Virus record (IMG/VR): IMGVR_UViG_3300030616_000016
Span: 167,648-231,647 of that record
Direction: 5' to 3' (one strand)
Length of the DNA: 64,000 bases
Below are positions 6,408-63,234 of this stretch, in pieces (positions within the stretch are counted from its first letter, which is position 1; every line of letters starts with the position of its first letter). The notes below the pieces were generated by a model. That model saw only the letters and a list, made by a program, of their open reading frames with translations, ran no database searches and was not told where the DNA came from. The position numbers were made by a program, and so were the translations under genes.

Positions 6408-6422
6408 TCATGAGTATTGAAT

Positions 6423-29000: not shown

Positions 29001-30149
29001 ATGGCAAGAACAATAGATAAAACTGGTTTAATGAACAGAATGTTGCGAAGGCTAAGCAACAGAGGATTTAATTCTCTTAGTACTGGATCGATGGTGCGTA
29101 CTATGGCAGAGATCTGGGCTGAGGAAACTTCGCAAGTTCTTGAAGATATTGACTTTATAACATCTAGATATATGTTGGCTAATGCTACTGGTGGCTTTTT
29201 GGACATTCTTGGTCAACTTGTTGGATTGCAGCGTACACCGCCAATTACTTCTTCTGTAGATGCTGAAGACGAAATTGTAAAATTCTATACAACAACAGGT
29301 GTTTTATCTGATTACCTGCCTGCGTCTGATGTTTCTGGATTTGCAGAAATACCAGCTGGAACAAGAATATCTGATCCTGACAATGTTGTTGTATATGAAG
29401 TAGAACGCACAATTGTTCCTATGGGAGTATCAGAAATATATGTTGGAGCTAGTGCTGTTGAGACTGGGTCTCATACCACAGTTCCAGCTAATAATCTTAC
29501 AAACCATGACTTAAATATATCCAATATAAGTGTTACGAATACAAGTGCGATATCAAATGGAGCGGATTTAGAGAGCGATGAGAATTTCAGGTATAGAATT
29601 TCTAGATCTCGCACGACTGCAGCTAAGGCTAATGAGACTGCTGTCAGACTGGCAGCGCTTCTTGTTCCTGGTATATCTGATGTTAATCTTAAACCAAATG
29701 TATATGGCCCTGGTACTTTTGAAGTATTGCTTGTTCCAGAAGGCAATGTTGTTACAGAATCACAGAGAACTACAGCTGAGATTAGTATAAGAGACGCCGC
29801 ATCTTTTGGCACGACTATATATATTACAGAGCCGACTTATTTGACTATAAATATGGTTGTTCATGTTACAACCCAAAACATGTCGACACAAAACGACAAT
29901 TCCACTTCACAAGAAACTGCTCTAGGAAATGTTCTGTCATATTTAAGCTCAATACCAATTGGCGGATCTTTTAATCCAGCAGTTCTAGAAAGAAGATTGT
30001 TAGATGGAGATCCTAATCTTATCAATGCAGAAGTAATATTACTATGTATTGATGGTAAACCAGTTCCATCTTCTATATATCAGCTTGATGATAATGAATT
30101 ATTTATGCCTGACCCACAACTATCTAATCCGATACAGGTGCTTATATGA
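29001..30149 (+). CDS. Baseplate J-like wedge protein
   Basis: ATGGFLDILGQLVGLQR, IPAGTRI, VTNTSAISNGADLESDENFRYRI, VPGISDV, GPGTFEV: a canonical Baseplate_J motif series. Confidence 0.92.
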   Translation: MARTIDKTGLMNRMLRRLSNRGFNSLSTGSMVRTMAEIWAEETSQVLEDIDFITSRYMLANATGGFLDILGQLVGLQRTPPITSSVDAEDEIVKFYTTTGVLSDYLPASDVSGFAEIPAGTRISDPDNVVVYEVERTIVPMGVSEIYVGASAVETGSHTTVPANNLTNHDLNISNISVTNTSAISNGADLESDENFRYRISRSRTTAAKANETAVRLAALLVPGISDVNLKPNVYGPGTFEVLLVPEGNVVTESQRTTAEISIRDAASFGTTIYITEPTYLTINMVVHVTTQNMSTQNDNSTSQETALGNVLSYLSSIPIGGSFNPAVLERRLLDGDPNLINAEVILLCIDGKPVPSSIYQLDDNELFMPDPQLSNPIQVLI

Positions 30150-30322: not shown

Positions 30323-31847
30323 CTTTAAATATCTACCTACTGCTTATGACCCAGAGACCACTAGGTTGGCTAATAGACTGCCTTCTTGGCATCCAATGAG
30401 AACTAAGAGGATGTCTAGTGTAGGACATCAGCTTATGAACTCTACAATGGGCTCTGGTATGTCTGATATCAACTACAGATATCTTGAAGGCATAGACAAT
30501 ACCTTCTTAGGTACATGTCGTACAGATCAAGTTGGGCCTGTATACGTTAAGACTACAAGTAAAAGACCGTCCAGAAGCTCGTCTAATACAAGAAATATGT
30601 TATTTAATGCCGGCTTCGAATGGGCTCCCAGAATATCTGATAAAGCATGGCAATGGTATACGGTTACTGAGAAGATATCAGATCAGACTACAGCAACAGA
30701 CGCTATAACGAGAGACCATACAAGCTATTATTATGGCGGAACCTCTTTGAAGGTTACTCTGGAGCAAGGATACCAGGCTTATATCATACAAAGCGTTACA
30801 AGAAGTTTTAAGGCCAACGAAACCATAGGCATAAGCGTTATGTATAAGGGTGAAAATACTTTGGTTGGCGATGATGGAATACGTTTATACCTTACTGGCG
30901 AGAAGCTATATGATGGTAGCACCACTCCTACATCTGTTGTATATGGCGACGCCGACACTGAAAATATATTTACCAGGCTGACTGAAGACGTACATTTTGC
31001 ACATGATGTCAACAATGTAAACTTCGTCATCAAGATAGTCAATTCCTCTTCAGGAACTATGACGTACTATATAGATGCTGCACAGATGGAACTTGCCGGT
31101 TCTTCCGGGTGGCATATAAGATACGATGATCCAGTATGGTTTGTTGATACAGAGAACAATGGTCCTTTTGATGTATTCTATTCAGATACATATAAACGCC
31201 GCGTGATTTATTGTTCAACTACAGATGATTTCATGCTGAGAACAGCTCCAACAAGAGCGATCCTCTCCACACTTAGTAGAAACATTAGCCTTCAAACTTC
31301 AACAAAAACACATTCGCGTAAGATAGAGTTTGATCGTAAGTCATGGACTACTGAGTTTAAGATAGAAAGCAATCAGATAGTAAGATTCAACTCATCTATC
31401 CCAGACGAGGCATTTGCTACATACAACCTATATGAACTAAACGATGATAATACGTGGTCTGTTAATAGCAGTGCGACTCTTCACGACTTTGTAATAATCG
31501 GTGAGCTTTTATACATTATTGCATATGAAGATTCACAATATGTCCTAAAGATTTGCAATCCAGAAATGAATGAGCCGGAAGATTCATATATCTATGTAAT
31601 CAATACCATACCGATTGAAGATGATTATGAGATATTAAATAGCTCAGTTTCTTCCCTGTCAATAGTACAAGCCACTGGTAGAGATAATCTATTTGCTCTT
31701 GATGTTGAATATCAAGATGGAAGCGAAACAGATACAGTAAGATTTGGGGTTACTTTAATGTACGACTATTATATATATGATGATACCTCCAACCAAATTA
31801 TTACCAGAGAAAATTATAATAATTATGGAGGCATTATAATAACATGA
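30309..31847 (+). CDS. Baseplate/wedge-associated protein with a carbohydrate-binding (CBM4/9-like) domain
   Basis: RNMLFNAGFE...GGTSLKVT...YYIDAAQMEL jelly-roll pattern. Follows the gpJ homolog. Confidence 0.55.
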   Translation: MKESSFKYLPTAYDPETTRLANRLPSWHPMRTKRMSSVGHQLMNSTMGSGMSDINYRYLEGIDNTFLGTCRTDQVGPVYVKTTSKRPSRSSSNTRNMLFNAGFEWAPRISDKAWQWYTVTEKISDQTTATDAITRDHTSYYYGGTSLKVTLEQGYQAYIIQSVTRSFKANETIGISVMYKGENTLVGDDGIRLYLTGEKLYDGSTTPTSVVYGDADTENIFTRLTEDVHFAHDVNNVNFVIKIVNSSSGTMTYYIDAAQMELAGSSGWHIRYDDPVWFVDTENNGPFDVFYSDTYKRRVIYCSTTDDFMLRTAPTRAILSTLSRNISLQTSTKTHSRKIEFDRKSWTTEFKIESNQIVRFNSSIPDEAFATYNLYELNDDNTWSVNSSATLHDFVIIGELLYIIAYEDSQYVLKICNPEMNEPEDSYIYVINTIPIEDDYEILNSSVSSLSIVQATGRDNLFALDVEYQDGSETDTVRFGVTLMYDYYIYDDTSNQIITRENYNNYGGIIIT

Positions 31848-34800
31848 GCGAACTCAGAGATCTATTTACTATTAAAGAACCTGTGGCGCCTCCCAACAGC
31901 CAGACATATTCACTTGGTGGTAAAGTGCACAGTTCTGTTGTAATGATGGAAGTCAATGGCACAAGATTTGGATCTGCCGCTCAGTTTGCTCATAGACCAT
32001 ATGATTCTGATTGGAATCAGTGGGCATATCCAGTCGATATTACTAATGTAGATACTTTTAATGTAGCATGCGCCGTTTCTACTTCCAATGAAGTTACTTT
32101 TATCAGCGAAGATGCTATTTATAATTACTCTGATACAGATATACAAATTGGCCTTGATGAATCTCTATCTAATGAGCTTCAGCTAGCAACTGATATGTAT
32201 AACGCAGGTCAGCTAACTGCAGGCCAGCTTGCATGTGTGTCAAACGAGCTATCTCTTTCGTCTGTTCTTGGTGAATACTCTGCATCAGGAGAATGGATAG
32301 ATACTGATTATCTATCAGATATTCAGCTATCTATAAGAGGATGGAAAGAAGGCAGAGGGCCATTTGGCTATACAAATGCATCTACAGTTGTTACATCTCA
32401 TCCAGACGCAAATACATTCTTAAATAACGCTATGCAGGTAAATAGTCTTGCGAGCAATGATTATATTGAAAGCCTTGTTGCAGATGGGTATACAACTGGA
32501 GATAGGCTGTGGACTCACCTATTTAGATCAGAATTCTCTTTGGGTGAAGACTATATATCCACTACAGATCTCAGTCTTGTACTAGAATATGAAGGCGCTA
32601 TTGAAGTATTCCTCAATGGCGCATCTGTATATAGAGACAATATGAAGTGTAGCTCTACATTCCCATGGGGATTTTCTGAGTACGCAACAGCAAGGTCTGA
32701 CACTACTACAACTGTTGATCTTAGTAGTTATACAAGTCTTGTACAACAGGGAACAAATACCATAGGCATAGCATTAAAGACTGCAAGTAAAACAGACGAT
32801 AGCGCGTTTGTATCTGCAAAGCTCGAAGGCAGTATATGGAAATATCAATGGTCAGACCCAAAACAAGTTACACTAGAGCTTTCTGATGGAACACAAACAG
32901 AGGAGCTTAATTTCAACTCCTTGGATAACTTCGGTCTAATGATTGACATGGAAAGACTTCCAGGAGAGCACAACGTAGATTATAAAGAAAGAATGCTTAA
33001 TAGCTTAGATCCTGAGCTTCCTTCTAATTCTACTATACTTGGGTTATTAAATGGTATTTCTCATAATCTAGGATTGCCAATAGACACCACAGCTATAACC
33101 ATTGAAGCGAACGACTTATCAGAGAAGCCTAACAATAAGATAGTTACTGGTATGACTGTATATACAAGAAATAACTATTTCTATTTTACAGCTGACCAGT
33201 TTATCAAATCAAACGAGCAGCTAACAATTGATTCCAATTATCCTATAGCTACAATATCTAAGACAGTTGATAGGCTTATTAAGATTACTGATGCAGACGG
33301 CAATATAATTAACGATGCTCTTTATACTACATCTCACGATGGAACAGAAATTGAAATTAACAGCGATCTTTCTTCTGAAGTTTTATATGCTACCTATCAG
33401 TATGCTGAGCGTATAGACATGACTGATATATCTATCCAGGATGTTGTATTATTCATCAACTCTATTCTGTTTGGTACGTCTCTTGTAGCAACGGCCACCG
33501 TTAGCGAAGAGTTCTTTCCTGAGATATATCGTGGAACATGTTCAACTGCCGGCACAACTTATATAGATGACAATATAAATGTTGAGAATCTAAACCTTCC
33601 GTCTCCATCATACATCAACCTTGTTGATGCTGAGAAGCGCAGAAAGGTTTCTAGTATATCAGATGAAAGAATATACTTCGAAGGTTCTTCTCTTGGCACT
33701 TATACTGATGTTGAATACACTCTAAACTATTGTCCGAGTGCGTTCTTTATTCCTCGTACCAGATTTGAAGAGAATGACAATAATACATTATACATACCTT
33801 TATATCAAGTAAGATTGGATCGTATAAACAAAGACATGCTTGAGAAATATTCCAACGTATACCAAGGTCAGTTAAATGATGTTGGCGATATGATTCAAAT
33901 GATTAGGGATAGCATGCATGTAACATGGGACGAACAGGTTGTTGACTTTGATATGTGGGATGCCATAGATAACTTCCTAATGTCTAACTCTGAAATACCT
34001 GGGTTGTATGATATGCCTAAGCAGGCATTTACAACAACCACAACAGATATGATGTCTCCAGATGAATTTAGGCTTGTTGGCGATCCTTCTAATGATTATG
34101 TCGCCCACTTCTTTAATTCGAATGACTTTGTATCTGGGGTTGGTAGCATAGATGATTACGATAGTCCTATTAATCACAGAGACGATCTTGCTCTGTCTGA
34201 CATAGTAGTAGAAACTGATGGGTGGAGACCTAAGTTAAAAACAGGTTATTTCTATATCAGAGACAGAGAATATTATCTATTTGATAACAAAGAATGTAAG
34301 TGGATCAATGATCTTACATGGGTGAAAATACCTGTTCCTTACACAACTGCAAACAACGGACAGTCTGTGCAGCCTAAGGTGCAGGCAGTTTCTATAACGC
34401 ACAATCCTACATCTTTTGTTGTACCAAGTACTTATATTCAAATCAAAGATGACTATATATGGCTGAATATGAGCTTTCTTAATCCCGAAGGATCTCCTGG
34501 GTATACGTCAAATCCTTTTAATTGTACTGTAAATATTAATTATACCTATTATGACCTTGTGGGTCAGAGCATGTCACTAAACTCTTCTGGAGTATCTACG
34601 GTTAATCTATTAAACCTAGACCGCGTATATGTCATGGATCCTTTACCTACAGATGGTGCTCCTATAGTCTTAACAGATCTTAATGCAAGTCCTTCCTCTG
34701 ATTATACAGATAGACATCCTCAGTTTTCTGTTGATACAGAAGGCGCAATTGAATTTCTTGACAGTAAAATAGACCATCAAAACGTAGTATTTGAATGGGA

Positions 34801-34945
34801 ATCTGGCTCTGGCGAATACTATATATCTGACAGAGTGGATTATAATCCTGCTAACAATCCAGAATCTACTGGGTTTCTTGCTATAGAAAATGACCAGTCA
34901 AGCCCTATTGGTGAAGAGTTTGACGGGCCTGGAGGTGTATTGTGA
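31844..34945 (+). CDS. Large baseplate wedge-like protein with a galactose-binding-like domain
   Basis: THLFRSEF...YEGAIEVFLNGASVYRDNM...GTNTIGIAL sugar-binding module. LDNFGLMIDMERLPGEHNVDYKERML resembles the gpI/gpJ-type wedge motif. Confidence 0.6.
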   Translation: MSELRDLFTIKEPVAPPNSQTYSLGGKVHSSVVMMEVNGTRFGSAAQFAHRPYDSDWNQWAYPVDITNVDTFNVACAVSTSNEVTFISEDAIYNYSDTDIQIGLDESLSNELQLATDMYNAGQLTAGQLACVSNELSLSSVLGEYSASGEWIDTDYLSDIQLSIRGWKEGRGPFGYTNASTVVTSHPDANTFLNNAMQVNSLASNDYIESLVADGYTTGDRLWTHLFRSEFSLGEDYISTTDLSLVLEYEGAIEVFLNGASVYRDNMKCSSTFPWGFSEYATARSDTTTTVDLSSYTSLVQQGTNTIGIALKTASKTDDSAFVSAKLEGSIWKYQWSDPKQVTLELSDGTQTEELNFNSLDNFGLMIDMERLPGEHNVDYKERMLNSLDPELPSNSTILGLLNGISHNLGLPIDTTAITIEANDLSEKPNNKIVTGMTVYTRNNYFYFTADQFIKSNEQLTIDSNYPIATISKTVDRLIKITDADGNIINDALYTTSHDGTEIEINSDLSSEVLYATYQYAERIDMTDISIQDVVLFINSILFGTSLVATATVSEEFFPEIYRGTCSTAGTTYIDDNINVENLNLPSPSYINLVDAEKRRKVSSISDERIYFEGSSLGTYTDVEYTLNYCPSAFFIPRTRFEENDNNTLYIPLYQVRLDRINKDMLEKYSNVYQGQLNDVGDMIQMIRDSMHVTWDEQVVDFDMWDAIDNFLMSNSEIPGLYDMPKQAFTTTTTDMMSPDEFRLVGDPSNDYVAHFFNSNDFVSGVGSIDDYDSPINHRDDLALSDIVVETDGWRPKLKTGYFYIRDREYYLFDNKECKWINDLTWVKIPVPYTTANNGQSVQPKVQAVSITHNPTSFVVPSTYIQIKDDYIWLNMSFLNPEGSPGYTSNPFNCTVNINYTYYDLVGQSMSLNSSGVSTVNLLNLDRVYVMDPLPTDGAPIVLTDLNASPSSDYTDRHPQFSVDTEGAIEFLDSKIDHQNVVFEWESGSGEYYISDRVDYNPANNPESTGFLAIENDQSSPIGEEFDGPGGVL

Positions 34946-35130
34946 ATAGTAATGAGTATTATAAAGAATCTAAGCCAGCTAAAGAAAGCACATTTAAGTT
35001 TATTGAATGTCCTTCTTGCGGCACAAAGATTGAAATTAAGCCTAAAGACAACTTCAAGGTATGTGTGCATTGTGGAGCTGAATTGTTACCTAATATATAC
35101 TCTAATCAGAATGACATCATAGAGGGTTAA
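34942..35130 (+). CDS. Zinc-ribbon protein (62 aa)
   Basis: CPSCG...CVHCG. GTG start after a GGAGGT RBS, with a GTGA overlap. Confidence 0.7.
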   Translation: MNSNEYYKESKPAKESTFKFIECPSCGTKIEIKPKDNFKVCVHCGAELLPNIYSNQNDIIEG

Positions 35131-35132
35131 TC

Positions 35133-35732
35133 ATGGCATATAATGGAACCTTAAGAATAGATCTTGAATCTGATATTCTTGCGCCGACTTCATATCTAGT
35201 CATAAGGGTCATGTTTCTTAGCTCAACTGATCCTACTGTGAGGACAGATGTTACAACTCTTGTATCTCTTTCTACAGCCAATGGTAATGCAATCATATAC
35301 AATTCAACAGACTTAGAAAGACCTCTGCTGTATGGAGTATCAGATGGTTCAGATACTATTACGGCAACTATCGGCGCTGCATCTGGTACCAAGTCTATTA
35401 CCGTGGATAGTAGCTGGGATTATGACATCAATGAAAACTTTGATATGGATGGCGACTCATTTAAAGTTCCATATGCAAAGACATCTGGTTATAATAAAGG
35501 ACGCAAGAGGGTTAATCTAGATACAGAAGAAGATGATCAGACCGACGTTATGAGCAATACTACTACCGATACTAACAAGCCCTATTCTATTGGTGTTATG
35601 CCAGATAGGATAGTGGTTAAGCAGACATTTGATTCATCTACTGTATGGACCACAAAATCTAGTGGTTATGGAAGATGGTATGGAAGAAAATTTGGCGTAG
35701 TCGAAGAGCTCGACAAACTGGGAATCGATTAA
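35133..35732 (+). CDS. Hypothetical virion protein (beta-rich, possibly Ig-like)
   Basis: GSDTITATIGAASGTKSITV resembles an Ig strand. C-terminal GYGRWYGRKFG motif. Confidence 0.5.
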   Translation: MAYNGTLRIDLESDILAPTSYLVIRVMFLSSTDPTVRTDVTTLVSLSTANGNAIIYNSTDLERPLLYGVSDGSDTITATIGAASGTKSITVDSSWDYDINENFDMDGDSFKVPYAKTSGYNKGRKRVNLDTEEDDQTDVMSNTTTDTNKPYSIGVMPDRIVVKQTFDSSTVWTTKSSGYGRWYGRKFGVVEELDKLGID

Positions 35733-35747
35733 TTCAGGAGAAGTAAA

Positions 35748-36383
35748 ATGCCATCAGGACAAACAGAACACTTAAAGCTTTCTACCTTTAATAGCGGTGA
35801 AGATGGCTGGGCAGCTGCGATGAATAGAAATCTTCGCGTACTAGACAGCACACTTGCTACTGTATTGAAGGAAACGAATCTAAAAATAGCAGCGGTAGAA
35901 CAGCAAATAGCAAACAGATATATTGATCTTGAGACCTCTCTTCAGACACAGACCGAGGCGTATATTAACAATATATCTAGCGCACAAAGCGCTAGCTATT
36001 CTAATCTTACAGATTATTTTGAAACTGTGATACAGCCTACTCTAGAAACGTTTCTTACTGACATGAATGCTATCACAGCTCAGATACAAGCCGCTCTTAC
36101 TGCTGCAGAAACCACCAGACAAGAAACAAATAGTTCTATATCTGATATGTTTGATCTAATAAACACTCAGTTTGCTGCTGTAAGCGCAGAAATTCAATCT
36201 GAGACAGCTACAGTTAATGCAGCAAAATCTGAGCTGCAGAGCTTACTTGACAGTATAGAATCGGCTTTGAATACACATGTAGATAACCTTAGTAATCCAC
36301 ATGAGGTTGATGCTGACCAAATTGGCGATCTTGGCGATATAATTAAATATCAAGAGCATGAAGACGATGCTGCTTTTCTATAA
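35748..36383 (+). CDS. Short coiled-coil tail fibre/whisker
   Basis: N-terminal fibre-anchor-like QTEHLKLSTF...WAAAMNRNLRVLD, a long heptad region, and the fibre motif HVDNLSNPHEV. Confidence 0.62.
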   Translation: MPSGQTEHLKLSTFNSGEDGWAAAMNRNLRVLDSTLATVLKETNLKIAAVEQQIANRYIDLETSLQTQTEAYINNISSAQSASYSNLTDYFETVIQPTLETFLTDMNAITAQIQAALTAAETTRQETNSSISDMFDLINTQFAAVSAEIQSETATVNAAKSELQSLLDSIESALNTHVDNLSNPHEVDADQIGDLGDIIKYQEHEDDAAFL

Positions 36384-36392
36384 GAGGTAGAT

Positions 36393-37898
36393 ATGAGCGT
36401 TTTAGGTACTACATCAACACTTGGACTAAAACTGTTTAATCCAGGCACTGCATGGTTGGCATTCAATGACAATCTTGACATATTAGATGCATGGTATAAA
36501 ACAAATGTAATAGACGCCGATCCTAGTGATAGAATATCTGACGCGCATGATCAGGTTAAAAAAGCATCAGATTATGTCACTGCGGATTCCGTTTATGTGG
36601 ATGTCCTACAGGCATGGGATGCCAATATACTTAGCTATGAATCTGCTATTATTGAAGACGGTAGTTTAGCATGGACATACCAAATGATTGCAGAAGATAT
36701 TAATTTTGGCTTAAAAGCATCTAAAACCGGCGGCATATTTTACACCAAAATTCCTACTATAGCCAGTAAAAGCTCGTTACGAGATACGACAAAAGATATA
36801 GATTCATTGCCAACATCTCTTCATTACAATTTTGGTCAAGATTATATATCTACTGATCTTATTAAAGCGTTAAATAGTACTGATGAATATGTTCTAGCAT
36901 ATGAGAGCGCTTCTAGTGATTACCAAGATGCATCTGGATCTCCTACGCCAGTATATTTTGATCCTTCTACCACAACTGTTCCTTCAGGGTATCATGGAAT
37001 ACCAGGTATGCTTTGGGATGGGTTTATTTCTGGCGGAACTGAAACAGTTGCTGCTGCTGTTGAGTCCGACGCTTATTCAAATGAATTTGTACCTGGTATT
37101 TCTGGTATAAATGACTATCTTGATGATACTTGGACAACTGGAATCAATGTTGACTTCATGGGAGAAACAGGAAAGATTAGGCCACCTGGATATCTTGACT
37201 ATAGAACTTTTGGTCAGGATATGTATAATGCTACCCTTATGTATAGAATGGCTGTAGAGTATCATTTTGGCACAACAATGCCTAGCAGGTACGCGGATTT
37301 TAGAGATTCAGTTAGCAATGACTTGTACTATAAAAATGATCAGCTTGACTATCTTGTAGATACTAGAATAAACACCGACGTTTCTAATGAACTAAGCGAC
37401 AATATTAGCGAATTAAATGAATCAATTTCTTCTGACTTGCGTCTGGATGGCAATTTTATTCTAAGTGGTGGATATTACGATGGTTATAAGATTGATGATG
37501 CCATAGACATTCTATCTCAAAAGGTAGCTGCACATGCTAATAATGAAATGATGGTTGAAGTTAAAAACCATGATGGTATAATTGGTTATGCAAGCGTGTT
37601 GGTTGATGAAGGAGATGTTAATGGAGTGCACCAGGTTAGATTCTTAGATGATAATATTGGAACTGTAACCGATTCTGATATAATTCCGTTAGGCGCAGAT
37701 AGGGTAGCGGTAGGCGAAAGTGAATCAATGGTTGTTCCAACCGGATGGCATACTCTGGTTGTTATAAACGATAGTTATATGTATATAAAATTTGAAGCTA
37801 AAAACCCGCATTATGTACACGGAGCTCCTGCAAATGAAGATGACCAGGGTATTGTTGATGGACTTAACATAACATATACTTCTGGTGATTCATCTTAG
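36393..37898 (+). CDS. Putative tail fibre protein
   Basis: Shares the anchor-like N-terminus (TTSTLGLKLFNPGTAWLAFNDNLDILD). Acidic composition. GAGGT RBS. Confidence 0.55.
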   Translation: MSVLGTTSTLGLKLFNPGTAWLAFNDNLDILDAWYKTNVIDADPSDRISDAHDQVKKASDYVTADSVYVDVLQAWDANILSYESAIIEDGSLAWTYQMIAEDINFGLKASKTGGIFYTKIPTIASKSSLRDTTKDIDSLPTSLHYNFGQDYISTDLIKALNSTDEYVLAYESASSDYQDASGSPTPVYFDPSTTTVPSGYHGIPGMLWDGFISGGTETVAAAVESDAYSNEFVPGISGINDYLDDTWTTGINVDFMGETGKIRPPGYLDYRTFGQDMYNATLMYRMAVEYHFGTTMPSRYADFRDSVSNDLYYKNDQLDYLVDTRINTDVSNELSDNISELNESISSDLRLDGNFILSGGYYDGYKIDDAIDILSQKVAAHANNEMMVEVKNHDGIIGYASVLVDEGDVNGVHQVRFLDDNIGTVTDSDIIPLGADRVAVGESESMVVPTGWHTLVVINDSYMYIKFEAKNPHYVHGAPANEDDQGIVDGLNITYTSGDSS

Positions 37899-37918
37899 GG
37901 CTCATCTGGAGAATAAAA

Positions 37919-40018
37919 ATGAGTAATGAGAAATTGATAAAAGGCTCACAAATAGATAGCAACCAGATTGAGTCTGGTCATCTTAAGAACAATTCTGTTA
38001 CAGAACAAAAAATATCAGATGGTTCGGTGACTGCTAATAAAATCGCAGATGGTGGTGTTACCAATTCTAAGATAAATACTGTTAATGGATCCAAGCTAGT
38101 AGACGATTCTGTAACTGAAGCAAAACTTGCTACTGCAGTACAGACTAAACTGAATAGCGCAACAGCTAGCGAGATATCTATGGGCGATGCAACAGAGCTG
38201 TTTGGCGTTGGCAGTTCTATCAAATACAGCGAAAATACATCTGATTTATATACAGATTCTACTCCAGCTAATAACTTCTGGCATCCTTCTTACAGTGTAG
38301 CAGCATTCTCGACGGGATCACAGCCATTAGGATATAATGACGCCGACGTTGTTACAACTCTTACAAACACCACAAACAAACAGTTTTATTTTGTTAAAGA
38401 TATTAACATAACTGCCGCGAATATAAGTAATGCGTATGGAATGTACTTTAACTTCCGTTGTGCTTTCAAGGGCATGATATGGGTCAATGGAACTGAGGCT
38501 TTCAATAACCTTGATGCAAGCGATGATGGAACAAAATATACTACGAAGGCTGGTCATACAATAGTTTGCGTCCAGGGAGCGCAGGATTATATTACAACTG
38601 GAATAGCAAATAGAATAGCAATTGTGTACAAGCAAACATCTGGTCAATCTAGCCTGGATTTTGGTGTTAATTTTGGTATGATTACTGGAGGAACTCAAGT
38701 TGTTGGCCTCGAATCGTTTGGCTTCTCTTTTGATATGGACAATATTCAGCAGGGAAGTGCATATAATAAAATATCAGCTGCAGAATATGCTACATTATCT
38801 AGAATACCTTCGGCTGCCGAAGCTGTATTCCTCACATCTACTAAGTCTTCTTCTTATGCAAATGGTGGTGTTGTTTTTGGCGACGATCTATCATCATATG
38901 CAAGTTTAACCGCATTTGCCGCAGATGGCGGCGCAGCTCTAATTGGATTCGATGATTCAGGCTTTGGATTTTCTGCCTCTACTGTTCAGGCTGCTATTGC
39001 CGGCGTTGTTAATAATATTTCATCAAGTATCACATTTGACAATACAACTCCTAGTATCAAAGGTCTTGATTCTACTCCAACTATGCAACAAGGGTTCAAT
39101 AAACTAGGCTACGCAGCCAATATTAACATAGACTCAACACACTTCACTGCCCTTGGAACAGGAAATTACTATATACAAAATGCTCTGAATTATCTACGAT
39201 ATGCATCTGGAATATCTTTTACGTCTACTGGCTTAGGTATAACTGGAGATCCGGCTACTGTGCAGGCACTTGGTACAGCACTAGCTGATCCTGACAATAT
39301 TTCATATGCATATGCCGGCAAGATGACAGCAACTAAGCTTGGTCCATTTGTAAAAGAATTGCGAGACAAAATGGACGATGCCACAAACATAGGATATAGC
39401 GGTAGTGTTGCTGGTTCAAATGTAAAACATGCATTAGATAATCTATCCGTAACCGCTTCTAATGAAATGTACTCCTACGATGGCAATAATGATTTTAGTG
39501 ATGTTCGAACTGCATTTGGAGCACTAGGAGAAACTTTACCTTCAGATTTTGATTCTACTCAATATGCTTTAAGTGTACCGATTGACTTCTTGATGTCTGC
39601 TATGTATCAAGTTCAGCAAGGTGTTCTACCTCACGCTAAATTTTGTGATACGTACAGCGTTGTTGCTCCAGATTCTGCAGAAGATGTATCCAATGACTAT
39701 ACATCGCCAGGTGAAGCAAGCTGGGGAGAGATAGAGATTGATAATATCTACGATACAAGCAATGAATTATGGGAAAACATATCTGCTGTTCTTGATAGAA
39801 CTACTGGACAGATGGATATAGTACATAAACTGAGTGGTGGATCTGGTGTGGTTGCAGGAATAGTGGAAGGAACAAATGAATATAGCACTTCAGTACATGC
39901 ACCAGAGGACTTTGTTGTATCTGACTTTGTGCTTAAGGTCCTCGATAATCAATTTACAGTTGCTTGTCAAGTAGATCAGGGTAAATCATCTAGAATTAAT
40001 GTGAGGTATGGCCCGTGA
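37919..40018 (+). CDS. Tail fibre protein with decapeptide repeats and a sugar-binding-like domain
   Basis: SVTxxKI[AS]DG-type repeats, FYFVKDINI...MIWVNGTE module, and fibre motifs GAALIGFDD...TVQAAI and NVKHALDNL. Confidence 0.7.
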   Translation: MSNEKLIKGSQIDSNQIESGHLKNNSVTEQKISDGSVTANKIADGGVTNSKINTVNGSKLVDDSVTEAKLATAVQTKLNSATASEISMGDATELFGVGSSIKYSENTSDLYTDSTPANNFWHPSYSVAAFSTGSQPLGYNDADVVTTLTNTTNKQFYFVKDINITAANISNAYGMYFNFRCAFKGMIWVNGTEAFNNLDASDDGTKYTTKAGHTIVCVQGAQDYITTGIANRIAIVYKQTSGQSSLDFGVNFGMITGGTQVVGLESFGFSFDMDNIQQGSAYNKISAAEYATLSRIPSAAEAVFLTSTKSSSYANGGVVFGDDLSSYASLTAFAADGGAALIGFDDSGFGFSASTVQAAIAGVVNNISSSITFDNTTPSIKGLDSTPTMQQGFNKLGYAANINIDSTHFTALGTGNYYIQNALNYLRYASGISFTSTGLGITGDPATVQALGTALADPDNISYAYAGKMTATKLGPFVKELRDKMDDATNIGYSGSVAGSNVKHALDNLSVTASNEMYSYDGNNDFSDVRTAFGALGETLPSDFDSTQYALSVPIDFLMSAMYQVQQGVLPHAKFCDTYSVVAPDSAEDVSNDYTSPGEASWGEIEIDNIYDTSNELWENISAVLDRTTGQMDIVHKLSGGSGVVAGIVEGTNEYSTSVHAPEDFVVSDFVLKVLDNQFTVACQVDQGKSSRINVRYGP
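37937..38140 (+). repeat. ~10-aa peptide repeats typical of phage fibre shafts
   Basis: NNSVTEQKIS DGSVTANKIA DGGVTNSKIN ... DDSVTEAKLA. Confidence 0.75.
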
Positions 40019-41034
40019 ACACAAAATTAATATTAAGGATTCATGATAAAGACGGTTCGCCAAGTGAAGGATATCCTATACAAGTATCTTTGTCTAAGCA
40101 TGCCGAAGATTACGATCCAGTTGGTCAAGTGAAAGATAGTGTTACTGGCTATACCAATCAAATGGTAACTGCTTTTACTGATTCTTCTGGTAGGGCGCCT
40201 ATTGAAATACTACCTTTTAATGCATCTACTTTTAAGTCCACAAAGAACTTTGAAACAATAGTGTCTGATGGAGAAGTGGGTGATATTGGATACGAAATGC
40301 CGTTAAGTGCTGAAGTCTTACTTACAGAATCATCTGTGTCTGGTCCTTCTTCTCAATACAAAATAATTAAAATGTCCAATCTATATGCTACAGAAACAAT
40401 TGAAACATCAGGCACTGCTGAAGGATTCTCTGTGTTTGAATTACCAGAAGATAAAAGGCCTTATCCAACAGAGTTTACTTGTGAAGATGTATATAGCGAA
40501 AAGATATATCTATTCCACAATCTTCATCCTGATTATGAGCCAGGCATTAATTTCTTTCCGGGCGATATGTTAAGTGACAGGTTTTTATATAATCTAATGG
40601 CTAATGTTATCTTTATTCCTGATGAGAAAGTTGTTTCAATAGTTGCTAGATATAGAATTAGACCATTTTATGTTGATGGAAATGATCCGACGACGCTAAA
40701 GGTTTACGATCCATCTAGCGATGTTAATTTAGCTCCACAGCAAAATATTTACGACAAGCTTGATAAGTCGATACATAATAATGGCCTGATAAGTAAAGAA
40801 AATGCTCTTAGTTCTATTAGCGTGCAAAGCAAAACAAAGACAGGTGCTTCCTATAGAGATTATGAAGGTAATGAAATAACAGGAAATGTTGATATTTATC
40901 CAGACATAAAACTGTATTTATGGGTAGAATATCCTAACCCAGATGGACCTGCGCCGATAAGAAATGTACATGAAGTATTTCTTCCTGGTCCATTATATGA
41001 CATTAATGAAAGTCAAATATATATGAGAGGTTAA
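40015..41034 (+). CDS. Hypothetical virion protein
   Basis: 339 aa, GTG start with GTGA overlap and GAGGT RBS. The N-terminal HDKDGSPSEGYPIQV...TDSSGRA is Ig/prealbumin-like. Confidence 0.55.
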   Translation: MNTKLILRIHDKDGSPSEGYPIQVSLSKHAEDYDPVGQVKDSVTGYTNQMVTAFTDSSGRAPIEILPFNASTFKSTKNFETIVSDGEVGDIGYEMPLSAEVLLTESSVSGPSSQYKIIKMSNLYATETIETSGTAEGFSVFELPEDKRPYPTEFTCEDVYSEKIYLFHNLHPDYEPGINFFPGDMLSDRFLYNLMANVIFIPDEKVVSIVARYRIRPFYVDGNDPTTLKVYDPSSDVNLAPQQNIYDKLDKSIHNNGLISKENALSSISVQSKTKTGASYRDYEGNEITGNVDIYPDIKLYLWVEYPNPDGPAPIRNVHEVFLPGPLYDINESQIYMRG

Positions 41035-41038
41035 AGAG

Positions 41039-42715
41039 ATGGCATCTGATACTTACACAGTAGCTTTTGGAGCTTTACAACAAACACTAATTAAACCTTA
41101 CAGGCTTAAGTTTAATTGGCATACTATTAACACTAATTACGATGCAATTGCGGCTGAATTTAATCAGCAATATACAACGCTCACGTCTCTTGCTAGTCGT
41201 GTTAGCGCAGTTGAGGCTCCAATAATAACGTCCAATTCATATCCTTTTATGACTGGCACATCATTCCCTATTACTGGCTCGTCTTCAGGTACCGCTCTCG
41301 ATATATCAATTGATTTTATTGATAGACTTTTTGTATTCAATGCCAGTCCTTCACGAGATTATTTTATATCTGAAATACAGGAGATAGTTACTCCCGTTAA
41401 AAGTCTTAAGGTTACAATATCTAGTAAGTACGGTGCTACAACTACTGAAGTATGTTCAGTAACTATTACAAAGACACAAACAGATGCCGGTACTCGCGAA
41501 TTTGCATTCTCTGAAATTAATGATAGCGGCGTATATGGTGGTATTGGAATAGGCGACGATTTTATTACAGCAGTGGGAGCTATAACAGCGTCAAATACAA
41601 CAACATATAGCTATTCAGTATCTAAGATAAATCCTACGTTTGTGCAATATACTTTTGTTGCATCAGAAGAAGCTGAGGCAGGAGTTCATATGCACAGGGT
41701 TCTAGAGCTGCCTGTTGGATCACAGAATGGATCAAATAGGACCTTTACTGCTCCTTACGGTGATGAATGGGAGACAGATTCTATTGCCGTATATCTTAAT
41801 GGCGTAGCATATAGTCCTCTTGAGATAACAAGTAAAACAAGCACAACGTTTACTCTTGGTTCGTCGGTTGGATCCAGTAGATTGCCAGATGCATCCCAAG
41901 CAAGAGAATTAAGAGTGAGTTATATGGTGTGGGTTGGAACGGAAGTTTCTCCTCTTGCTTCTAGCGGACAAAGATTTTACCAACACTTTGCAAGTCTGGC
42001 ATCAAGTGCTACAGAAGATATTTCTCACAAAGCAGATCCTGCCATGCGTAGATTAATTGAAGTATATACATTACACGCTGGCGGAAACTCTGATGGTGTT
42101 ATTAAGGTTGAATTCAATGCTGACACAGCTGACAATTACAATATAGTAGATCCTCCATTCTCAACTTCTACTAATGGAGTTGTTGATGAATATGGTGCTC
42201 ACTTGGCAGATGTTTCTAATGAGTACTATGCAACCGCAGCTGTATCTAATGAACCCATTGATGTTAGTGAAGTGACTAAGATATACGGTGTTAGCGTCGA
42301 CGCGTCTATACCATCATCTACTTATATAAGATGGTTTGCAAGATTCAGCAATAGTGGAGATTTTTATACTCATAATGGAACTAACTGGGCTATTACATCT
42401 ACTGCAGATTGTCAAAACGGTATGACCACCGCAGAACTTGAGGCTCTTTCTCAGTCTGACTGGGAATCTGCTAATGGTTTTAATGCAGGTGTTACCAGCT
42501 ATCTACAATTATTACCATACATGAGCACTAGCAATGATCTATATACGCCTTACCTTCAGAGCTATTCAGTAAGTAACGAGTGGGATGGAACATGGATTAA
42601 AGACGACCAAAGAAATTCTATTAGAGTTTCTATTATTGATGAGGATACCACAAGGATAGCAAATACATCTGCATCCAATGAATACACACTAACCAATATA
42701 TTTATAGCGGAATAA
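41039..42715 (+). CDS. Putative tail fibre/appendage protein
   Basis: Anchor-like NWHTINTNYDAI plus coiled coil, PVGSQNGSNRTFT...SIAVYLNGV beta module, C-terminal TPYLQSYSV. Confidence 0.58.
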   Translation: MASDTYTVAFGALQQTLIKPYRLKFNWHTINTNYDAIAAEFNQQYTTLTSLASRVSAVEAPIITSNSYPFMTGTSFPITGSSSGTALDISIDFIDRLFVFNASPSRDYFISEIQEIVTPVKSLKVTISSKYGATTTEVCSVTITKTQTDAGTREFAFSEINDSGVYGGIGIGDDFITAVGAITASNTTTYSYSVSKINPTFVQYTFVASEEAEAGVHMHRVLELPVGSQNGSNRTFTAPYGDEWETDSIAVYLNGVAYSPLEITSKTSTTFTLGSSVGSSRLPDASQARELRVSYMVWVGTEVSPLASSGQRFYQHFASLASSATEDISHKADPAMRRLIEVYTLHAGGNSDGVIKVEFNADTADNYNIVDPPFSTSTNGVVDEYGAHLADVSNEYYATAAVSNEPIDVSEVTKIYGVSVDASIPSSTYIRWFARFSNSGDFYTHNGTNWAITSTADCQNGMTTAELEALSQSDWESANGFNAGVTSYLQLLPYMSTSNDLYTPYLQSYSVSNEWDGTWIKDDQRNSIRVSIIDEDTTRIANTSASNEYTLTNIFIAE

Positions 42716-62929: not shown

Positions 62930-63234
62930 TGGTATATGTTAATAAGTTCGATATCAACAAGAATTCTAATGCTAGAGAACTACAACAGTTCCTTTCTGAA
63001 AACAGCATCAGCTCTGGTAAGATACTTAAAATAGAAAGCATTCCCAGGAACGATGACTTTCTTAGTATTATAATATTCTGGACTGATGAAGATATAAGCA
63101 GCTCTATAGAAGTTGCATTTGAAGAGACAGAGTCACAGGCTACCAGAGCTGTTATAGATGCACGCATAGGCACTGAGAATGACGGTGCTAATAATGGAAA
63201 ATTAATATTAAGAACCGGAATTATTCCGCAATGA
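62929..63234 (+). CDS. Small protein paralogous to the N-terminus of the next gene
   Basis: KFDINKNSNARELQQFLSENSI...IIIFWTD versus KFDIPSNSDAANIQDFMKANDI...VIIFYID. Confidence 0.65.
   Translation: MVYVNKFDINKNSNARELQQFLSENSISSGKILKIESIPRNDDFLSIIIFWTDEDISSSIEVAFEETESQATRAVIDARIGTENDGANNGKLILRTGIIPQ

What the first reader, a model, noticed from the sequence alone, without database searches (positions are those of the whole stretch)
31844..42715. Recurrent S-N-[E/D]-hydrophobic motif across unrelated outer virion proteins: a possible modification or cleavage sequon
Seen (manual count of SN[ED]): 7 in the 1033-aa protein (TSNEV, LSNEL, VSNEL, ASNDY, KSNEQ, PSNDY, NSNDF); 3 in the 501-aa (YSNEF, VSNDL, VSNEL); 4 in the 699-aa (MSNEK, ASNEM, VSNDY, TSNEL); 5 in the 558-aa (VSNEY, VSNEP, TSNDL, VSNEW, ASNEY); 4 in the 502-aa adaptor at 1322-2830 (GSNDV, ASNDM, TSNDL, VSNEY). 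Single copies occur in the tail terminator (PSNEL) and sheath (TSNEA). That is 23 in ~3300 aa, against a rough expectation of about 3 from composition, usually with a small residue before and a hydrophobic or aromatic residue after. I saw one in the tape-measure-like protein and none in the RNAP-like protein. The codons vary, so the signal is at protein level. Inference: a recognition sequence for a phage-encoded enzyme (glycosylation or another capsid/tail decoration) or a docking motif. It also fits the S/A/G-x-E cleavage rule of phiKZ-type prohead proteases, though those act on head proteins.
Basis: partly seen in the sequence, partly recalled or inferred. Interest (0 to 1): 0.82.

Follow-up and report, generated by a model that had tools for sequence, protein, structure and literature searches.

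The report
Recurrent S-N/G-D/E-hydrophobic word in tail proteins
Five otherwise unrelated outer proteins of an uncultured marine-sediment jumbo phage carry many copies of a four-residue word (Ser, Asn or Gly, Asp or Glu, hydrophobic), kept by selection across a whole phage lineage, which looks like a tag read by a shared but unidentified factor and not like a protease cutting site.

Summary
SNE is the top-ranked of 8,000 tripeptides in the five proteins (p=2e-11). The signal is in frame only and uses all six Ser codons.

The word is longer and wider than reported: [small]-S-[N/G]-[D/E]-hydrophobic. With the hydrophobic residue it occurs 20 times in the five proteins and 3 times in the other 34 ORFs.

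- The enrichment recurs in the same four orthologues of two relatives (42-71% identity).
- A deeper sister clade (~24% identity) uses S-G-[D/E]-hydrophobic instead, including in fibres with no BLASTP match to the window's 501/699-aa proteins.
- It is absent from inner baseplate, sheath and head proteins, from 141 of 149 distant homologues, and from the nearest cultured relative, Bacillus phage 0305phi8-36.
- Composition, homology, tandem repeats, GC content and G/N dipeptide usage do not explain it.
- Sites are conserved islands in variable flanks and turn over between lineages. The N-versus-G choice is clade-wide.

My reading, at 0.4 confidence: a turn-forming short linear motif read in trans by a Ser-modifying enzyme or a shared fibre chaperone. 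N-glycosylation and protease cleavage are disfavoured. A purely structural turn remains a serious rival. No reader gene was found.

The parts
1322..2830 (+). 502-aa Ig-like (Big_5) protein encoded two genes after the major capsid gene. A head-decoration or neck-fibre candidate, not shown to be an adaptor. It carries 4 SN[ED] sites and 1 SGD site.
   Evidence: Sites: GSNDV aa12 (nt 1355-1363), ASNDM aa172 (1835-1843), TSNDL aa253 (2078-2086), VSNEY aa275 (2144-2152), GSGDY aa497 (2810-2818). Sites 253 and 275 are invariant in 4 homologues; site 172 is SGE in P0007; site 12 is not conserved.
31844..34945 (+). 1033-aa peripheral baseplate or tail protein, two genes after Baseplate_J, with a sugar-binding-type beta-sandwich at about residues 220-340. 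It carries 7 SN[ED] and 2 SGE sites.
   Evidence: Sites: TSNEV aa81 (nt 32084-32092), LSNEL aa109 (32168-32176), VSNEL aa133 (32240-32248), ASGEW aa148 (32285-32293), ASNDY aa204 (32453-32461), KSNEQ aa456 (33209-33217), PSNDY aa749 (34088-34096), NSNDF aa759 (34118-34126), GSGEY aa989 (34808-34816).
36393..37898 (+). 501-aa distal tail protein of unknown fold, with 3 SN[ED] sites.
   Evidence: Sites: YSNEF aa229 (nt 37077-37085), VSNDL aa308 (37314-37322), VSNEL aa331 (37383-37391). Site 331 is invariant in three genomes although only 14% of its flanking columns are invariant.
37919..40018 (+). 699-aa tail fibre (N-terminal tail-fibre repeats, phrog_892), with 4 SN[ED] sites, 3 of them followed by a hydrophobic residue.
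   Evidence: Sites: MSNEK aa2 (nt 37922-37930; probably incidental), ASNEM aa514 (39458-39466), VSNDY aa591 (39689-39697), TSNEL aa614 (39758-39766).
41039..42715 (+). 558-aa distal tail protein, with 5 SN[ED] sites and 1 SGD site, all in the C-terminal 170 residues.
   Evidence: Sites: VSNEY aa393 (nt 42215-42223), VSNEP aa403 (42245-42253), NSGDF aa439 (42353-42361), TSNDL aa498 (42530-42538), VSNEW aa512 (42572-42580), ASNEY aa546 (42674-42682).
29001..30149 (+). Baseplate_J wedge protein. It serves as a landmark: the motif-rich genes lie distal to it. It has no motif copies.
   Evidence: Pfam Baseplate_J 3.6e-23; phrog_6; 0 sites. The orthologous inner-baseplate proteins in L002, L003, L006, L008 and L009 are also motif-free.
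34118..34159 (+). Extended 14-aa element SNDFVSGVGSIDDY in the 1033-aa protein. A similar element occurs in the 501-aa protein.
   Evidence: SNDFVSGVGSIDDY (1033, aa759) versus SNEFVPGISGINDY (501, aa229; nt 37077-37118) versus SGEFVPGASGEINS (P0008, aa568).

Best explanation
S-[N/G]-[D/E]-hydrophobic, usually preceded by V/A/T/P, is a selected short linear motif that does not depend on the fold. It marks the peripheral tail proteins, and one Ig-like head- or neck-proximal protein, of an uncultured lineage of marine-sediment jumbo myophages distantly related to Bacillus phage 0305phi8-36.

Position 2 accepts only Asn or Gly. By general structural knowledge these are the two residues that most easily take a left-handed backbone conformation. 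I therefore infer that the word forms a tight turn just before a hydrophobic segment.

I infer that this turn is read in trans by one factor encoded by the lineage, and that the factor's preference moved from Gly (sister clade) to Asn (the window's clade). My leading candidate is an enzyme that modifies the invariant Ser, by O-glycosylation or by acidophilic S-x-[D/E]-type phosphorylation. A shared fibre-assembly chaperone or docking partner is nearly as likely.

Shown: the enrichment, its restriction to a set of proteins, its conservation, its turnover and the clade-wide flavour. Inferred: the turn conformation, the existence of a reader and what kind of reader it is.
For: 1. Enrichment is 8-fold for SN[ED] (23 vs 2.99) and about 20-fold with the hydrophobic residue (20 vs 0.96). 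It occurs in five proteins with no detectable similarity.

2. It replicates in the same four orthologues of L002 (6/4/3/5) and L003 (4/3/3/3). The 9-10 flanking proteins in each hold none, apart from two copies in L002's 512-aa protein.

3. In the sister clade at about 24% identity, S-G-[D/E]-hydrophobic is enriched 15-37-fold. Examples are P0008 (9 vs 0.42), the L008 763-aa fibre (8 vs 0.53) and the L009 733-aa fibre (8 vs 0.35). These two fibres have no BLASTP match to the window's 501/699-aa proteins. The word therefore follows the virion position of a protein, not its fold.

4. Only N or G is enriched at position 2. D, S, T, A, Q and K are not. N and G exchange at homologous columns, for example SNDF = SGDY and SNE = SGE = TGE.

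5. The flavour is clade-wide: N:G is 49:17 in the window clade and 2:45 in the sister clade (Fisher p=1e-14). Locus GC does not explain this (window 0.395, L008 0.401). Nor does overall N or G content or global G[ED]/N[ED] usage.

6. Motif columns are 59% invariant, against 32% for the flanks and 39% overall.

7. There are eight lineage-specific SN[ED]-hydrophobic sites among three genomes, against roughly 1 expected (my estimate; p=1e-5 if 1, 0.012 on the looser estimate of 3). They include three-residue switches such as DRV/SNE/ERV before Tyr.

8. There is no periodicity. The flanks show no common helix or strand amphipathicity.

9. Controls:
- 149 distant homologues show SN[ED] 52 vs 61 expected.
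- The wider S[GN][ED]-hydrophobic word is 90 vs 51 in them overall, and about 55 vs 47 once the eight most enriched proteins are set aside, my sum.
- Phage 0305phi8-36 tail proteins show about 10 vs 5.4, with gp154 and gp155 at 1 each.
- Head and packaging proteins of the same genome show no excess.
Against: - No reader was identified. Pfam and PHROGs name no glycosyltransferase, kinase or chaperone in the 64-kb window or in about 24 kb upstream. The only enzyme seen there is a Methyltransf_21 protein. About 143 kb of the genome was not examined.
- Restriction of position 2 to N or G is exactly what a purely conformational constraint predicts.
- Some sites are positionally conserved down to 24% identity (alignment columns 168, 854 and 1144), as structural residues would be.
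- The only usable AlphaFold model places the sites in mixed contexts: one in a confident strand, two at starts of predicted helices, four in low-confidence segments. A single conformation is therefore not demonstrated.
- I know of no described precedent for such a sequon or chaperone code in phages, and my literature searches found none.
Confidence: 0.4

Rival explanations
1. A purely structural word acting in cis. S-[G/N]-[D/E]-hydrophobic would be a favoured tight turn or bulge, with a positive-phi residue flanked by a capping Ser and an acid, that starts a buried strand or helix in the beta-rich or trimeric domains typical of distal tail proteins. There would be no trans-acting reader. The clade-wide N/G preference would reflect a shared physical constraint, such as trimer-axis packing or habitat.
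For: Only N or G is allowed at position 2. N and G swap at homologous columns. Some sites are positionally conserved at about 24% identity. A hydrophobic residue follows in 20 of 23 sites. The low-confidence 558-aa model places N499-D500 as a two-residue hairpin loop. Unrelated phage proteins show a mild general excess of the word, about 1.8-fold in 0305phi8-36.
Against: The word is enriched 15-35-fold only in this lineage. It is at background in homologous domains elsewhere, in the other beta-rich virion proteins of the same genomes and in 0305phi8-36. The sites have no periodicity or common flank pattern. They turn over by whole-word replacement. GC or composition does not explain the concerted N-versus-G flavour across unrelated proteins. 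The AlphaFold contexts are heterogeneous.
Confidence: 0.33
2. Multivalent ligand-binding sites. Each acid-plus-aromatic word would be a weak binding site for a metal ion or a host-surface glycan, repeated along the fibres for avidity.
For: The word is confined to receptor-side proteins. It pairs an acidic and often aromatic residue (Y/F/W in 11 of 23). The 1033-aa protein carries a sugar-binding-type sandwich. A DxDxDG calcium-type loop lies next to site 172 of the 502-aa protein.
Against: Four residues are too few to form a site. The aliphatic residues L, M and V are as common as aromatics. The word also occurs in the head- or neck-proximal 502-aa protein. Nothing under this idea explains the strict N/G rule.
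Confidence: 0.1
3. Maturation-protease sites of the phiKZ type (S/A/G-x-E, cut after Glu).
For: S-x-E fits the published consensus, as I recall it from Thomas et al. 2012 (not checked here). Ser and the acid are the most constant positions.
Against: Nine of 23 sites have Asp. There are 4-10 internal sites per protein, which would cut conserved tail proteins into small pieces. One site lies inside a confidently modelled strand (site 81, pLDDT about 92). Head, portal-region and capsid proteins are not enriched. The required hydrophobic residue after the acid and the N/G rule are not part of that consensus.
Confidence: 0.03
4. An N-linked glycosylation sequon with Asn as the acceptor.
For: Asn is central in the window's clade, and the proteins lie on the virion surface.
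Against: Gly replaces Asn at homologous sites and throughout the sister clade, with equal enrichment. No site has S/T at N+2. No oligosaccharyltransferase or NGT-like gene was seen in the parts examined.
Confidence: 0.03
5. Chance, composition or after-the-fact motif picking.
For: The motif was chosen after looking at the sequence.
Against: It ranks first of 8,000 tripeptides (p=2e-11). It replicates independently in five other genomes in the equivalent proteins. It survives the dipeptide-level expectation.
Confidence: 0.01

Closest known systems
Acidophilic S-x-E/D phosphorylation motif of FAM20C-type secretory kinases (bacterial CotH kinases share the fold, from my own knowledge)
   Same: Ser followed two residues later by an acid. 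There are many sites per substrate, the sites are scattered and they turn over in evolution. The S-x-E motif is described in papers listed, for example PMC12650399 and PMC4421793; I read titles and abstracts only.
   Different: Here position +1 is restricted to N or G and +3 must be hydrophobic. Asp is as good as Glu. No kinase gene was found. The setting is a phage tail, not a secretory pathway.
Virion protein glycosylation by phage- or virus-encoded glycosyltransferases: mycobacteriophage capsid and tail-tube O-glycosylation (own knowledge, not checked here) and the chlorovirus atypical N-sequons reviewed in PMC9614988 (listed, not read)
   Same: Surface virion proteins carry several short, non-canonical acceptor sites defined by the virus's own enzymes.
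   Different: No glycosyltransferase was found in the roughly 88 kb examined. The acceptor would have to be Ser, not Asn. The word is unlike any sequon I know of.
phiKZ / 201phi2-1 prohead-protease cleavage motif S/A/G-x-E (own knowledge)
   Same: It has the form small-x-acid, and it occurs in jumbo myophages.
   Different: That motif is cut after Glu only, in head and inner-body proteins, usually once or a few times near propeptide boundaries. Here Asp is common, the proteins are tail proteins, there are 4-10 sites per protein, and a hydrophobic residue plus N/G are required.
Two-residue beta-hairpin turns and G1 bulges, which prefer Gly or Asn at the positive-phi position (textbook structural knowledge)
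   Same: N and G are the only residues allowed at position 2. Small and hydrophobic residues flank the word. The word shows a mild excess in ordinary proteins.
   Different: A generic turn preference does not predict a 15-35-fold, lineage-restricted and protein-set-restricted enrichment. It also does not predict a clade-wide N-versus-G flavour.
Dependence of T4 fibre proteins gp12, gp34 and gp37 on the shared chaperone gp57A (own knowledge)
   Same: Several tail-fibre proteins unrelated in sequence depend on one phage-encoded factor. That would explain why only fibre-like proteins carry the word.
   Different: I know of no recognition motif for gp57A. No gp57A-like gene was identified here.
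Asp-box / BNR repeat, S-x-D-x-G-x-T-W
   Same: It has the S-x-D core in a hairpin. One site, SNEWDGTW at residue 512 of the 558-aa protein, is a near match shifted by one residue.
   Different: The other 22 sites lack the G-x-T-W part. Glu is as frequent as Asp.

Membership tests
phiKZ-type prohead protease substrates (S/A/G-x-E) | P1 residue is Glu | tested here: not met
   9 of 23 sites have Asp. The E/D mix is similar in the relatives.
phiKZ-type prohead protease substrates (S/A/G-x-E) | Substrates are head or inner-body proteins, cut at one or a few sites | tested here: not met
   The enriched proteins lie distal to Baseplate_J, or are an Ig-like protein. They have 4-10 sites per protein. 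Capsid, portal-region and terminase proteins are at background.
phiKZ-type prohead protease substrates (S/A/G-x-E) | Mature virion proteins begin or end at the motif | not testable with these tools
   This needs virion mass spectrometry or N-terminal sequencing.
N-glycosylation sequons (N-x-S/T; D/E-x-N-x-S/T) | Ser or Thr two residues after the Asn | tested here: not met
   N+2 is Y/F/W/L/M/V in 20 sites and Q, K or P in the other 3.
N-glycosylation sequons (N-x-S/T; D/E-x-N-x-S/T) | The Asn is indispensable | tested here: not met
   Gly replaces it at homologous columns and across the sister clade.
Bacteroidetes general O-glycosylation motif D-(S/T)-(A/I/L/V/M/T) | Asp before, and an aliphatic or Thr residue after, the acceptor Ser | tested here: not met
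   The residue after the Ser is always N or G. The residue before it is V, A or T, not Asp.
Acidophilic S-x-[E/D] kinase substrates (FAM20C/CotH-like logic) | Acid at +2 from the Ser | tested here: met
   True by definition of the motif. Ser and the acid are the most constant positions.
Acidophilic S-x-[E/D] kinase substrates (FAM20C/CotH-like logic) | A cognate kinase is encoded or available | tested here: inconclusive
   There is no kinase domain in the window or in about 24 kb upstream. About 143 kb of the genome was not examined.
Acidophilic S-x-[E/D] kinase substrates (FAM20C/CotH-like logic) | Phosphoserine is present at the sites | not testable with these tools
   This needs phosphoproteomics of virions.
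Tandem structural repeats of fibre proteins | Regular spacing and similarity between the units that carry the motif | tested here: not met
   Spacings are irregular, from 5 to 421 residues. No self-similarity was found by BLASTP. The flanks show no amphipathic signature. A spacing of 22-24 residues recurs four times but without similarity between the units.
Positive-phi tight turn (type I'/II' hairpin or G1 bulge) | Position restricted to Gly or Asn | tested here: met
   With S before and [ED]-hydrophobic after, only N or G is enriched at the middle position. D, S, T, A, Q and K are at background.
Positive-phi tight turn (type I'/II' hairpin or G1 bulge) | Turn geometry at the sites in a structure | tested here: inconclusive
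   The 558-aa model failed (pLDDT 37.5). The 1033-aa model (pLDDT 62) puts the sites in a strand, at helix starts and in low-confidence segments.
Asp-box (S-x-D-x-G-x-T-W) | The G-x-T-W part follows S-x-D | tested here: not met
   Only the site at residue 512 of the 558-aa protein (SNEWDGTW) comes close, shifted by one residue.

The most novel reading that the evidence does not exclude
The word is a lineage-specific sequon or 'fibre code'. A phage-encoded factor, either a new kind of Ser-directed virion-modifying enzyme or a dedicated fibre chaperone, recognises S-[N/G]-[D/E]-hydrophobic turns on every peripheral tail protein, whatever its fold. New receptor-binding proteins joining the module must acquire the word. 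The factor's specificity co-evolved with its whole substrate set from Gly to Asn in one sub-clade.
Probability: 0.3. Interest if true: 0.85.

Novelty: new variant of a known kind. Interest (0 to 1): 0.62.

Why it matters
If a shared factor reads this word, it would be, to my knowledge, the first sequence 'address' common to unrelated tail-fibre and baseplate proteins of a phage lineage.

It would give a direct handle on two open questions. One is how mosaic, frequently exchanged receptor-binding proteins stay compatible with one assembly or decoration machinery. The other is how widespread virion post-translational modification is in uncultured phages.

The clade-wide Gly-to-Asn shift would be a rare natural example of a recognition motif and its reader co-evolving across a whole substrate set.

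If it turns out to be only a favoured turn, it still gives a simple sequence signature for finding peripheral tail proteins in this poorly annotated 0305phi8-36-like marine lineage. Profile searches name almost nothing there.

Tried and rejected
- **Hidden homology between the five proteins.** BLASTP all-against-all and three hhalign profile pairs found none. The only shared piece is one 14-aa element between the 1033- and 501-aa proteins.
- **Solved-structure relatives.** None were found for any family.
- **AlphaFold of the 558-aa protein with 3 sequences.** It failed (pLDDT 37.5). The ESM Atlas model is also poor (pLDDT 0.45).
- **AlphaFold of the 1033-aa protein with a 99-row alignment.** It is usable only in parts. 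Foldseek identified only a GH2/rhamnosidase/PA14-type sugar-binding sandwich.
- **Tandem repeat or beta-helix rung idea.** The 22-24-residue spacing suggested it. I rejected it because there is no periodicity in any family.
- **Helix N-cap idea.** Rejected because the best N-cap residues (S, T, D) are not enriched at position 2 and the downstream segments are not amphipathic helices.
- **GC-driven choice of Asn (AAY) over Gly (GGN).** Rejected: the window and L008 have the same GC but opposite flavours.
- **Avoidance of Shine-Dalgarno-like GGNGA.** Rejected: G[ED] dipeptides are not globally depleted.
- **DNA-level motif.** Rejected: the pattern is in frame only, absent from the reverse strand, and uses all six Ser codons.
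- **Microdiversity from public runs.** 15 SNPs were found, 12 of them synonymous. One is a synonymous change in the Ser codon of site 498. This is too little to say anything.
- **Genome walk for enzymes.** About 24 kb upstream yielded terminase, capsid and a Methyltransf_21 gene, but no glycosyltransferase or kinase.
- **Literature.** I found no report of this word in phages.
- **Cultured relatives.** There is only a distant match to Bacillus phage 0305phi8-36 (sheath 31% identity). Its tail proteins lack the enrichment.

Full report
**What the window is.** All genes are on the + strand. The window is the last 64 kb of a 231,647-bp IMG/VR contig. The same genome was assembled independently as ENA ERZ27252234 k141_1275754, 231,593 bp. 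Public runs that hold it are marine sediment metagenomes. No cultured phage matches at DNA level. The nearest cultured relative is Bacillus phage 0305phi8-36, with sheath at 31% identity and a similar gene order: sheath, two tube paralogues, chaperone-position genes, three giant proteins, then the baseplate. Landmarks are the sheath at 4299-5648 and Baseplate_J at 29001-30149. The 699-aa protein has N-terminal tail-fibre repeats. The 502-aa protein has Big_5 Ig-like domains and lies two genes after the major capsid gene. The four clustered proteins of the finding are therefore distal baseplate or fibre proteins. The fifth is a head- or neck-proximal Ig-like protein; 'adaptor' is not shown.

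**The observation.** Twenty-three SN[ED] sites occur in 3,293 residues, against 2.99 expected from shuffles and 7.05 under a conservative dipeptide model. To deal with after-the-fact selection I ranked all tripeptides. SNE is first of 8,000 in these proteins (p=2e-11) and SN[DE] is the best of all X-Y-[ab] classes (p=2e-13). Permuted orders of the same residues are not enriched. The DNA pattern is found in frame only (23, against 0 and 2 in the other frames and 0 on the reverse strand), with all six Ser codons. The proteins show no detectable similarity by BLASTP, and the three profile pairs tested by hhalign are also negative.

**The motif is longer.**
- The residue after the acid is hydrophobic in 20 of 23 sites, against a background of 0.32.
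- The residue before Ser is V, A or T in 16 of the 22 sites with full flanks.
- Position -2 is S or D in 14 of 22.
- SN[ED]-hydrophobic occurs 20 times in the five proteins and 3 times in the other 34 ORFs (17,718 residues). With V/A/T in front the counts are 15 and 1.

**It is inherited and selected.**
- The 1033-aa protein has two close relatives (65% and 51% identity), on contigs with the same gene order (L002, L003).
- The same four orthologues are enriched in both: L002 6/4/3/5 and L003 4/3/3/3, against expectations of 0.2-1.2 each. The 9-10 neighbouring proteins hold none, except two copies in L002's 512-aa protein.
- Fifteen of 19 window sites are kept in L002 and 8 of 19 in L003. That is well above what 42-71% identity predicts for three adjacent residues.
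- Motif columns are 59% invariant. Their flanks are 32% invariant and the proteins overall 39%. The sites are conserved islands in variable surroundings.
- Eight SN[ED]-hydrophobic sites are lineage-specific, against roughly one expected (my estimate). Some differ from the other genomes at all three residues, such as DRV/SNE/ERV before Tyr and VAG/NME/SND before Leu or Ile.
- In the 502-aa family, two sites are invariant in four homologues, one becomes SGE and one is not conserved.

**Asn is interchangeable with Gly, and the choice is clade-wide.**
- Within the close relatives, homologous columns read SNE/SGE/TGE, SND/SND/SGD and SNE/SNE/SGE.
- A profile search with the 1033-aa family found 295 relatives. 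The four that match over several domains (P0008, P0009, P0010 and P0013, about 24% identity) carry S-G-[D/E]-hydrophobic instead. P0008 has 9 copies against 0.42 expected.
- At one homologous column, SNDF in the window clade equals SGDY in P0010 and P0013.
- Their contigs (L006, L008, L009) show the same distribution as the window. The inner baseplate proteins have none. The proteins after Baseplate_J have many. These include a 763-aa fibre (8 vs 0.53) and a 733-aa fibre (8 vs 0.35). Neither has a BLASTP match to the window's 501/699-aa proteins.

Counts of S-x-[D/E]-hydrophobic by middle residue x:

| Clade | Middle residue N | Middle residue G | Middle residue D, S, T, A, Q, K |
|---|---|---|---|
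| Window clade | 13-20 per genome, O/E 13-23 | 4-9 per genome | background |
| Sister clade | 0-2 per genome | 4-18 per genome, O/E 15-37 | background |

The N:G split is 49:17 against 2:45 (Fisher p=1e-14). GC does not explain it (window 0.395, L008 0.401). Nor do overall N and G content or general G[ED]/N[ED] usage.

**Controls outside the lineage.**
- The 149 distant homologues of the 1033-aa protein (117,426 residues) have SN[ED] at 52 against 61 expected.
- Apart from the eight most enriched of them, they have about background levels of the wider word, roughly 55 against 47 expected (my sum).
- In 0305phi8-36, 29 virion proteins total about 10 against 5.4 expected, and the distal tail proteins gp154 and gp155 have one each.
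- Head, portal-region and terminase proteins of the window genome are at background.
- Ordinary proteins therefore show at most a twofold preference for this word. That is far from the 15-35-fold seen here.

**Structure.**
- There are no solved relatives.
- AlphaFold failed on the 558-aa protein (pLDDT 37.5). That poor model does place N499-D500 as a two-residue hairpin loop.
- With a 99-row alignment (A6) the 1033-aa model reached pLDDT 62. Residues 1-100, 220-410 and 800-990 are confident. Residues 220-340 form a beta-sandwich that Foldseek matches to the sugar-binding domains of GH2 enzymes, a rhamnosidase CBM and PA14.
- The nine S[NG][ED] sites fall as follows. One lies inside a confident strand (81). 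Two lie at the starts of predicted helices (109, 204). One lies near the end of a helix (133). Four lie in low-confidence segments (148, 456, 749, 759). One lies at the edge of the last domain (989).
- Eight of the nine lie in, or within six residues of, a low-confidence segment. That is suggestive of domain boundaries but weak, and I did no formal test.
- The copies have no periodicity. The flanks show no shared helix or strand amphipathicity.

**Interpretation.** The strict N/G rule points to a backbone conformation that only those residues take easily. The word is therefore probably a tight turn before a hydrophobic segment. This is an inference from general structural knowledge.

A turn preference alone does not explain four things:
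- the restriction to one phage lineage and to one set of virion proteins;
- the appearance of the word in non-homologous fibres occupying the same module;
- whole-word births in single lineages;
- a genome-wide switch of flavour between sub-clades.

These are the hallmarks of a short linear motif read by a common factor. Ser, the acid and the hydrophobic residue are the constant parts, so if something is modified it is most likely the Ser. The S-x-[D/E] logic resembles acidophilic kinase motifs, and O-glycosylation is equally possible. A shared fibre chaperone or docking partner would explain the protein set just as well.

I put the trans-reader reading at 0.40, the purely structural reading at 0.33, ligand-binding sites at 0.10, and cleavage and N-glycosylation at 0.03 each. 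No reader gene was found in the roughly 88 kb examined. The only enzyme seen near the start of the late operon is an FkbM-type methyltransferase (L011:4418-4975), which is a lead and no more.

- Right: the counts, the protein-level nature, the outer-virion restriction and the idea of a recognition or docking word.
- Wrong or unsupported: Asn as the key residue (Gly substitutes), and the protease rule. The protease rule fails because Asp is common, there are many internal sites in tail proteins, and head proteins are not enriched.
- The '1812/1834-aa tape-measure-like and RNAP-like' labels were not tested. By position these proteins correspond to gp145-gp147 of 0305phi8-36.

**Limits.**
- Relatives are few and come from metagenomes.
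- Expectations for relatives are composition-based.
- Site homology in poorly aligned regions is uncertain.
- Clade counts are not phylogenetically independent. The flavour does hold across at least five unrelated protein families in one clade and at least four in the other.
- Only one partly reliable structural model exists.
- About 143 kb of the genome was not inspected.

Noticed in passing
window 57467-61084 (+): A 1205-aa protein with an N-terminal concanavalin-A-like lectin domain (Laminin_G_3, 4e-18) followed by about 800 residues of almost pure polyserine (55% Ser overall). This accounts for SSS being the most over-represented tripeptide in the window. Polyserine tracts are classic O-glycosylation substrates in bacteria, by my own knowledge. 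That may bear on the modification hypothesis.
   Followed up: partly
window 63231-63995 (+): A 254-aa ORF with a short collagen-like G-x-y stretch (Pfam Collagen and several PHROG tail-fibre families), a Cys-rich middle and a polyserine tail that runs to the contig end. Both independent assemblies of the genome break at this same place, in or just after the polyserine-coding tail.
   Followed up: partly
window 1784-1810 (+), residues 155-163 of the 502-aa protein: A conserved DxDxDGxxD loop (DADGDGVTD; DVDEDGVSD, DVDGDGVSD and DLDNDGIND in homologues). It resembles thrombospondin-type-3 or EF-hand-like calcium-binding loops and lies just upstream of motif site 172.
   Followed up: no
window 20698-27549 (+): A 2283-aa protein carrying a staphylococcal-nuclease (SNase) domain at residues 251-372. 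The domain is conserved in the L002 and L008 homologues. The gene sits in the position of 0305phi8-36 gp147, the third of three giant proteins before the baseplate.
   Followed up: no
window 5668-6360 and 6417-7400 (+): Two paralogous proteins (BLASTP 3e-6) hit phrog_9206, which PHROGs labels 'major head protein'. The 0305phi8-36 record carries that same product name for gp140 and gp141, while its notes call them tail tube and tube paralogue. The PHROG label is therefore probably misleading here.
   Followed up: partly
window 34118-34159 and 37077-37118 (+): A 14-residue element is shared by two otherwise unrelated proteins: SNDFVSGVGSIDDY in the 1033-aa protein and SNEFVPGISGINDY in the 501-aa protein. 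P0008 has SGEFVPGASGEINS. It may be a common docking peptide.
   Followed up: partly
L011:4418-4975 (same genome, about 19 kb upstream of the window start): A 185-aa Methyltransf_21 (FkbM-family) methyltransferase gene is the first + strand gene upstream of the terminase and head genes in L011. It was the only recognisable enzyme in the roughly 24 kb inspected upstream.
   Followed up: no
window 38473-42556: A second marine-sediment run (X2) holds a strain variant with 15 single-base differences in 4.8 kb. Twelve are synonymous, including AGC to AGT in the Ser codon of motif site 498 of the 558-aa protein.
   Followed up: yes
window 9029-9793 / 9756-15194 (+): The 254-aa ORF overlaps the start of the 1812-aa ORF by 38 bases. 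It sits where 0305phi8-36 has its two 'tail chaperonin' genes before gp145. I did not check for a programmed frameshift.
   Followed up: no
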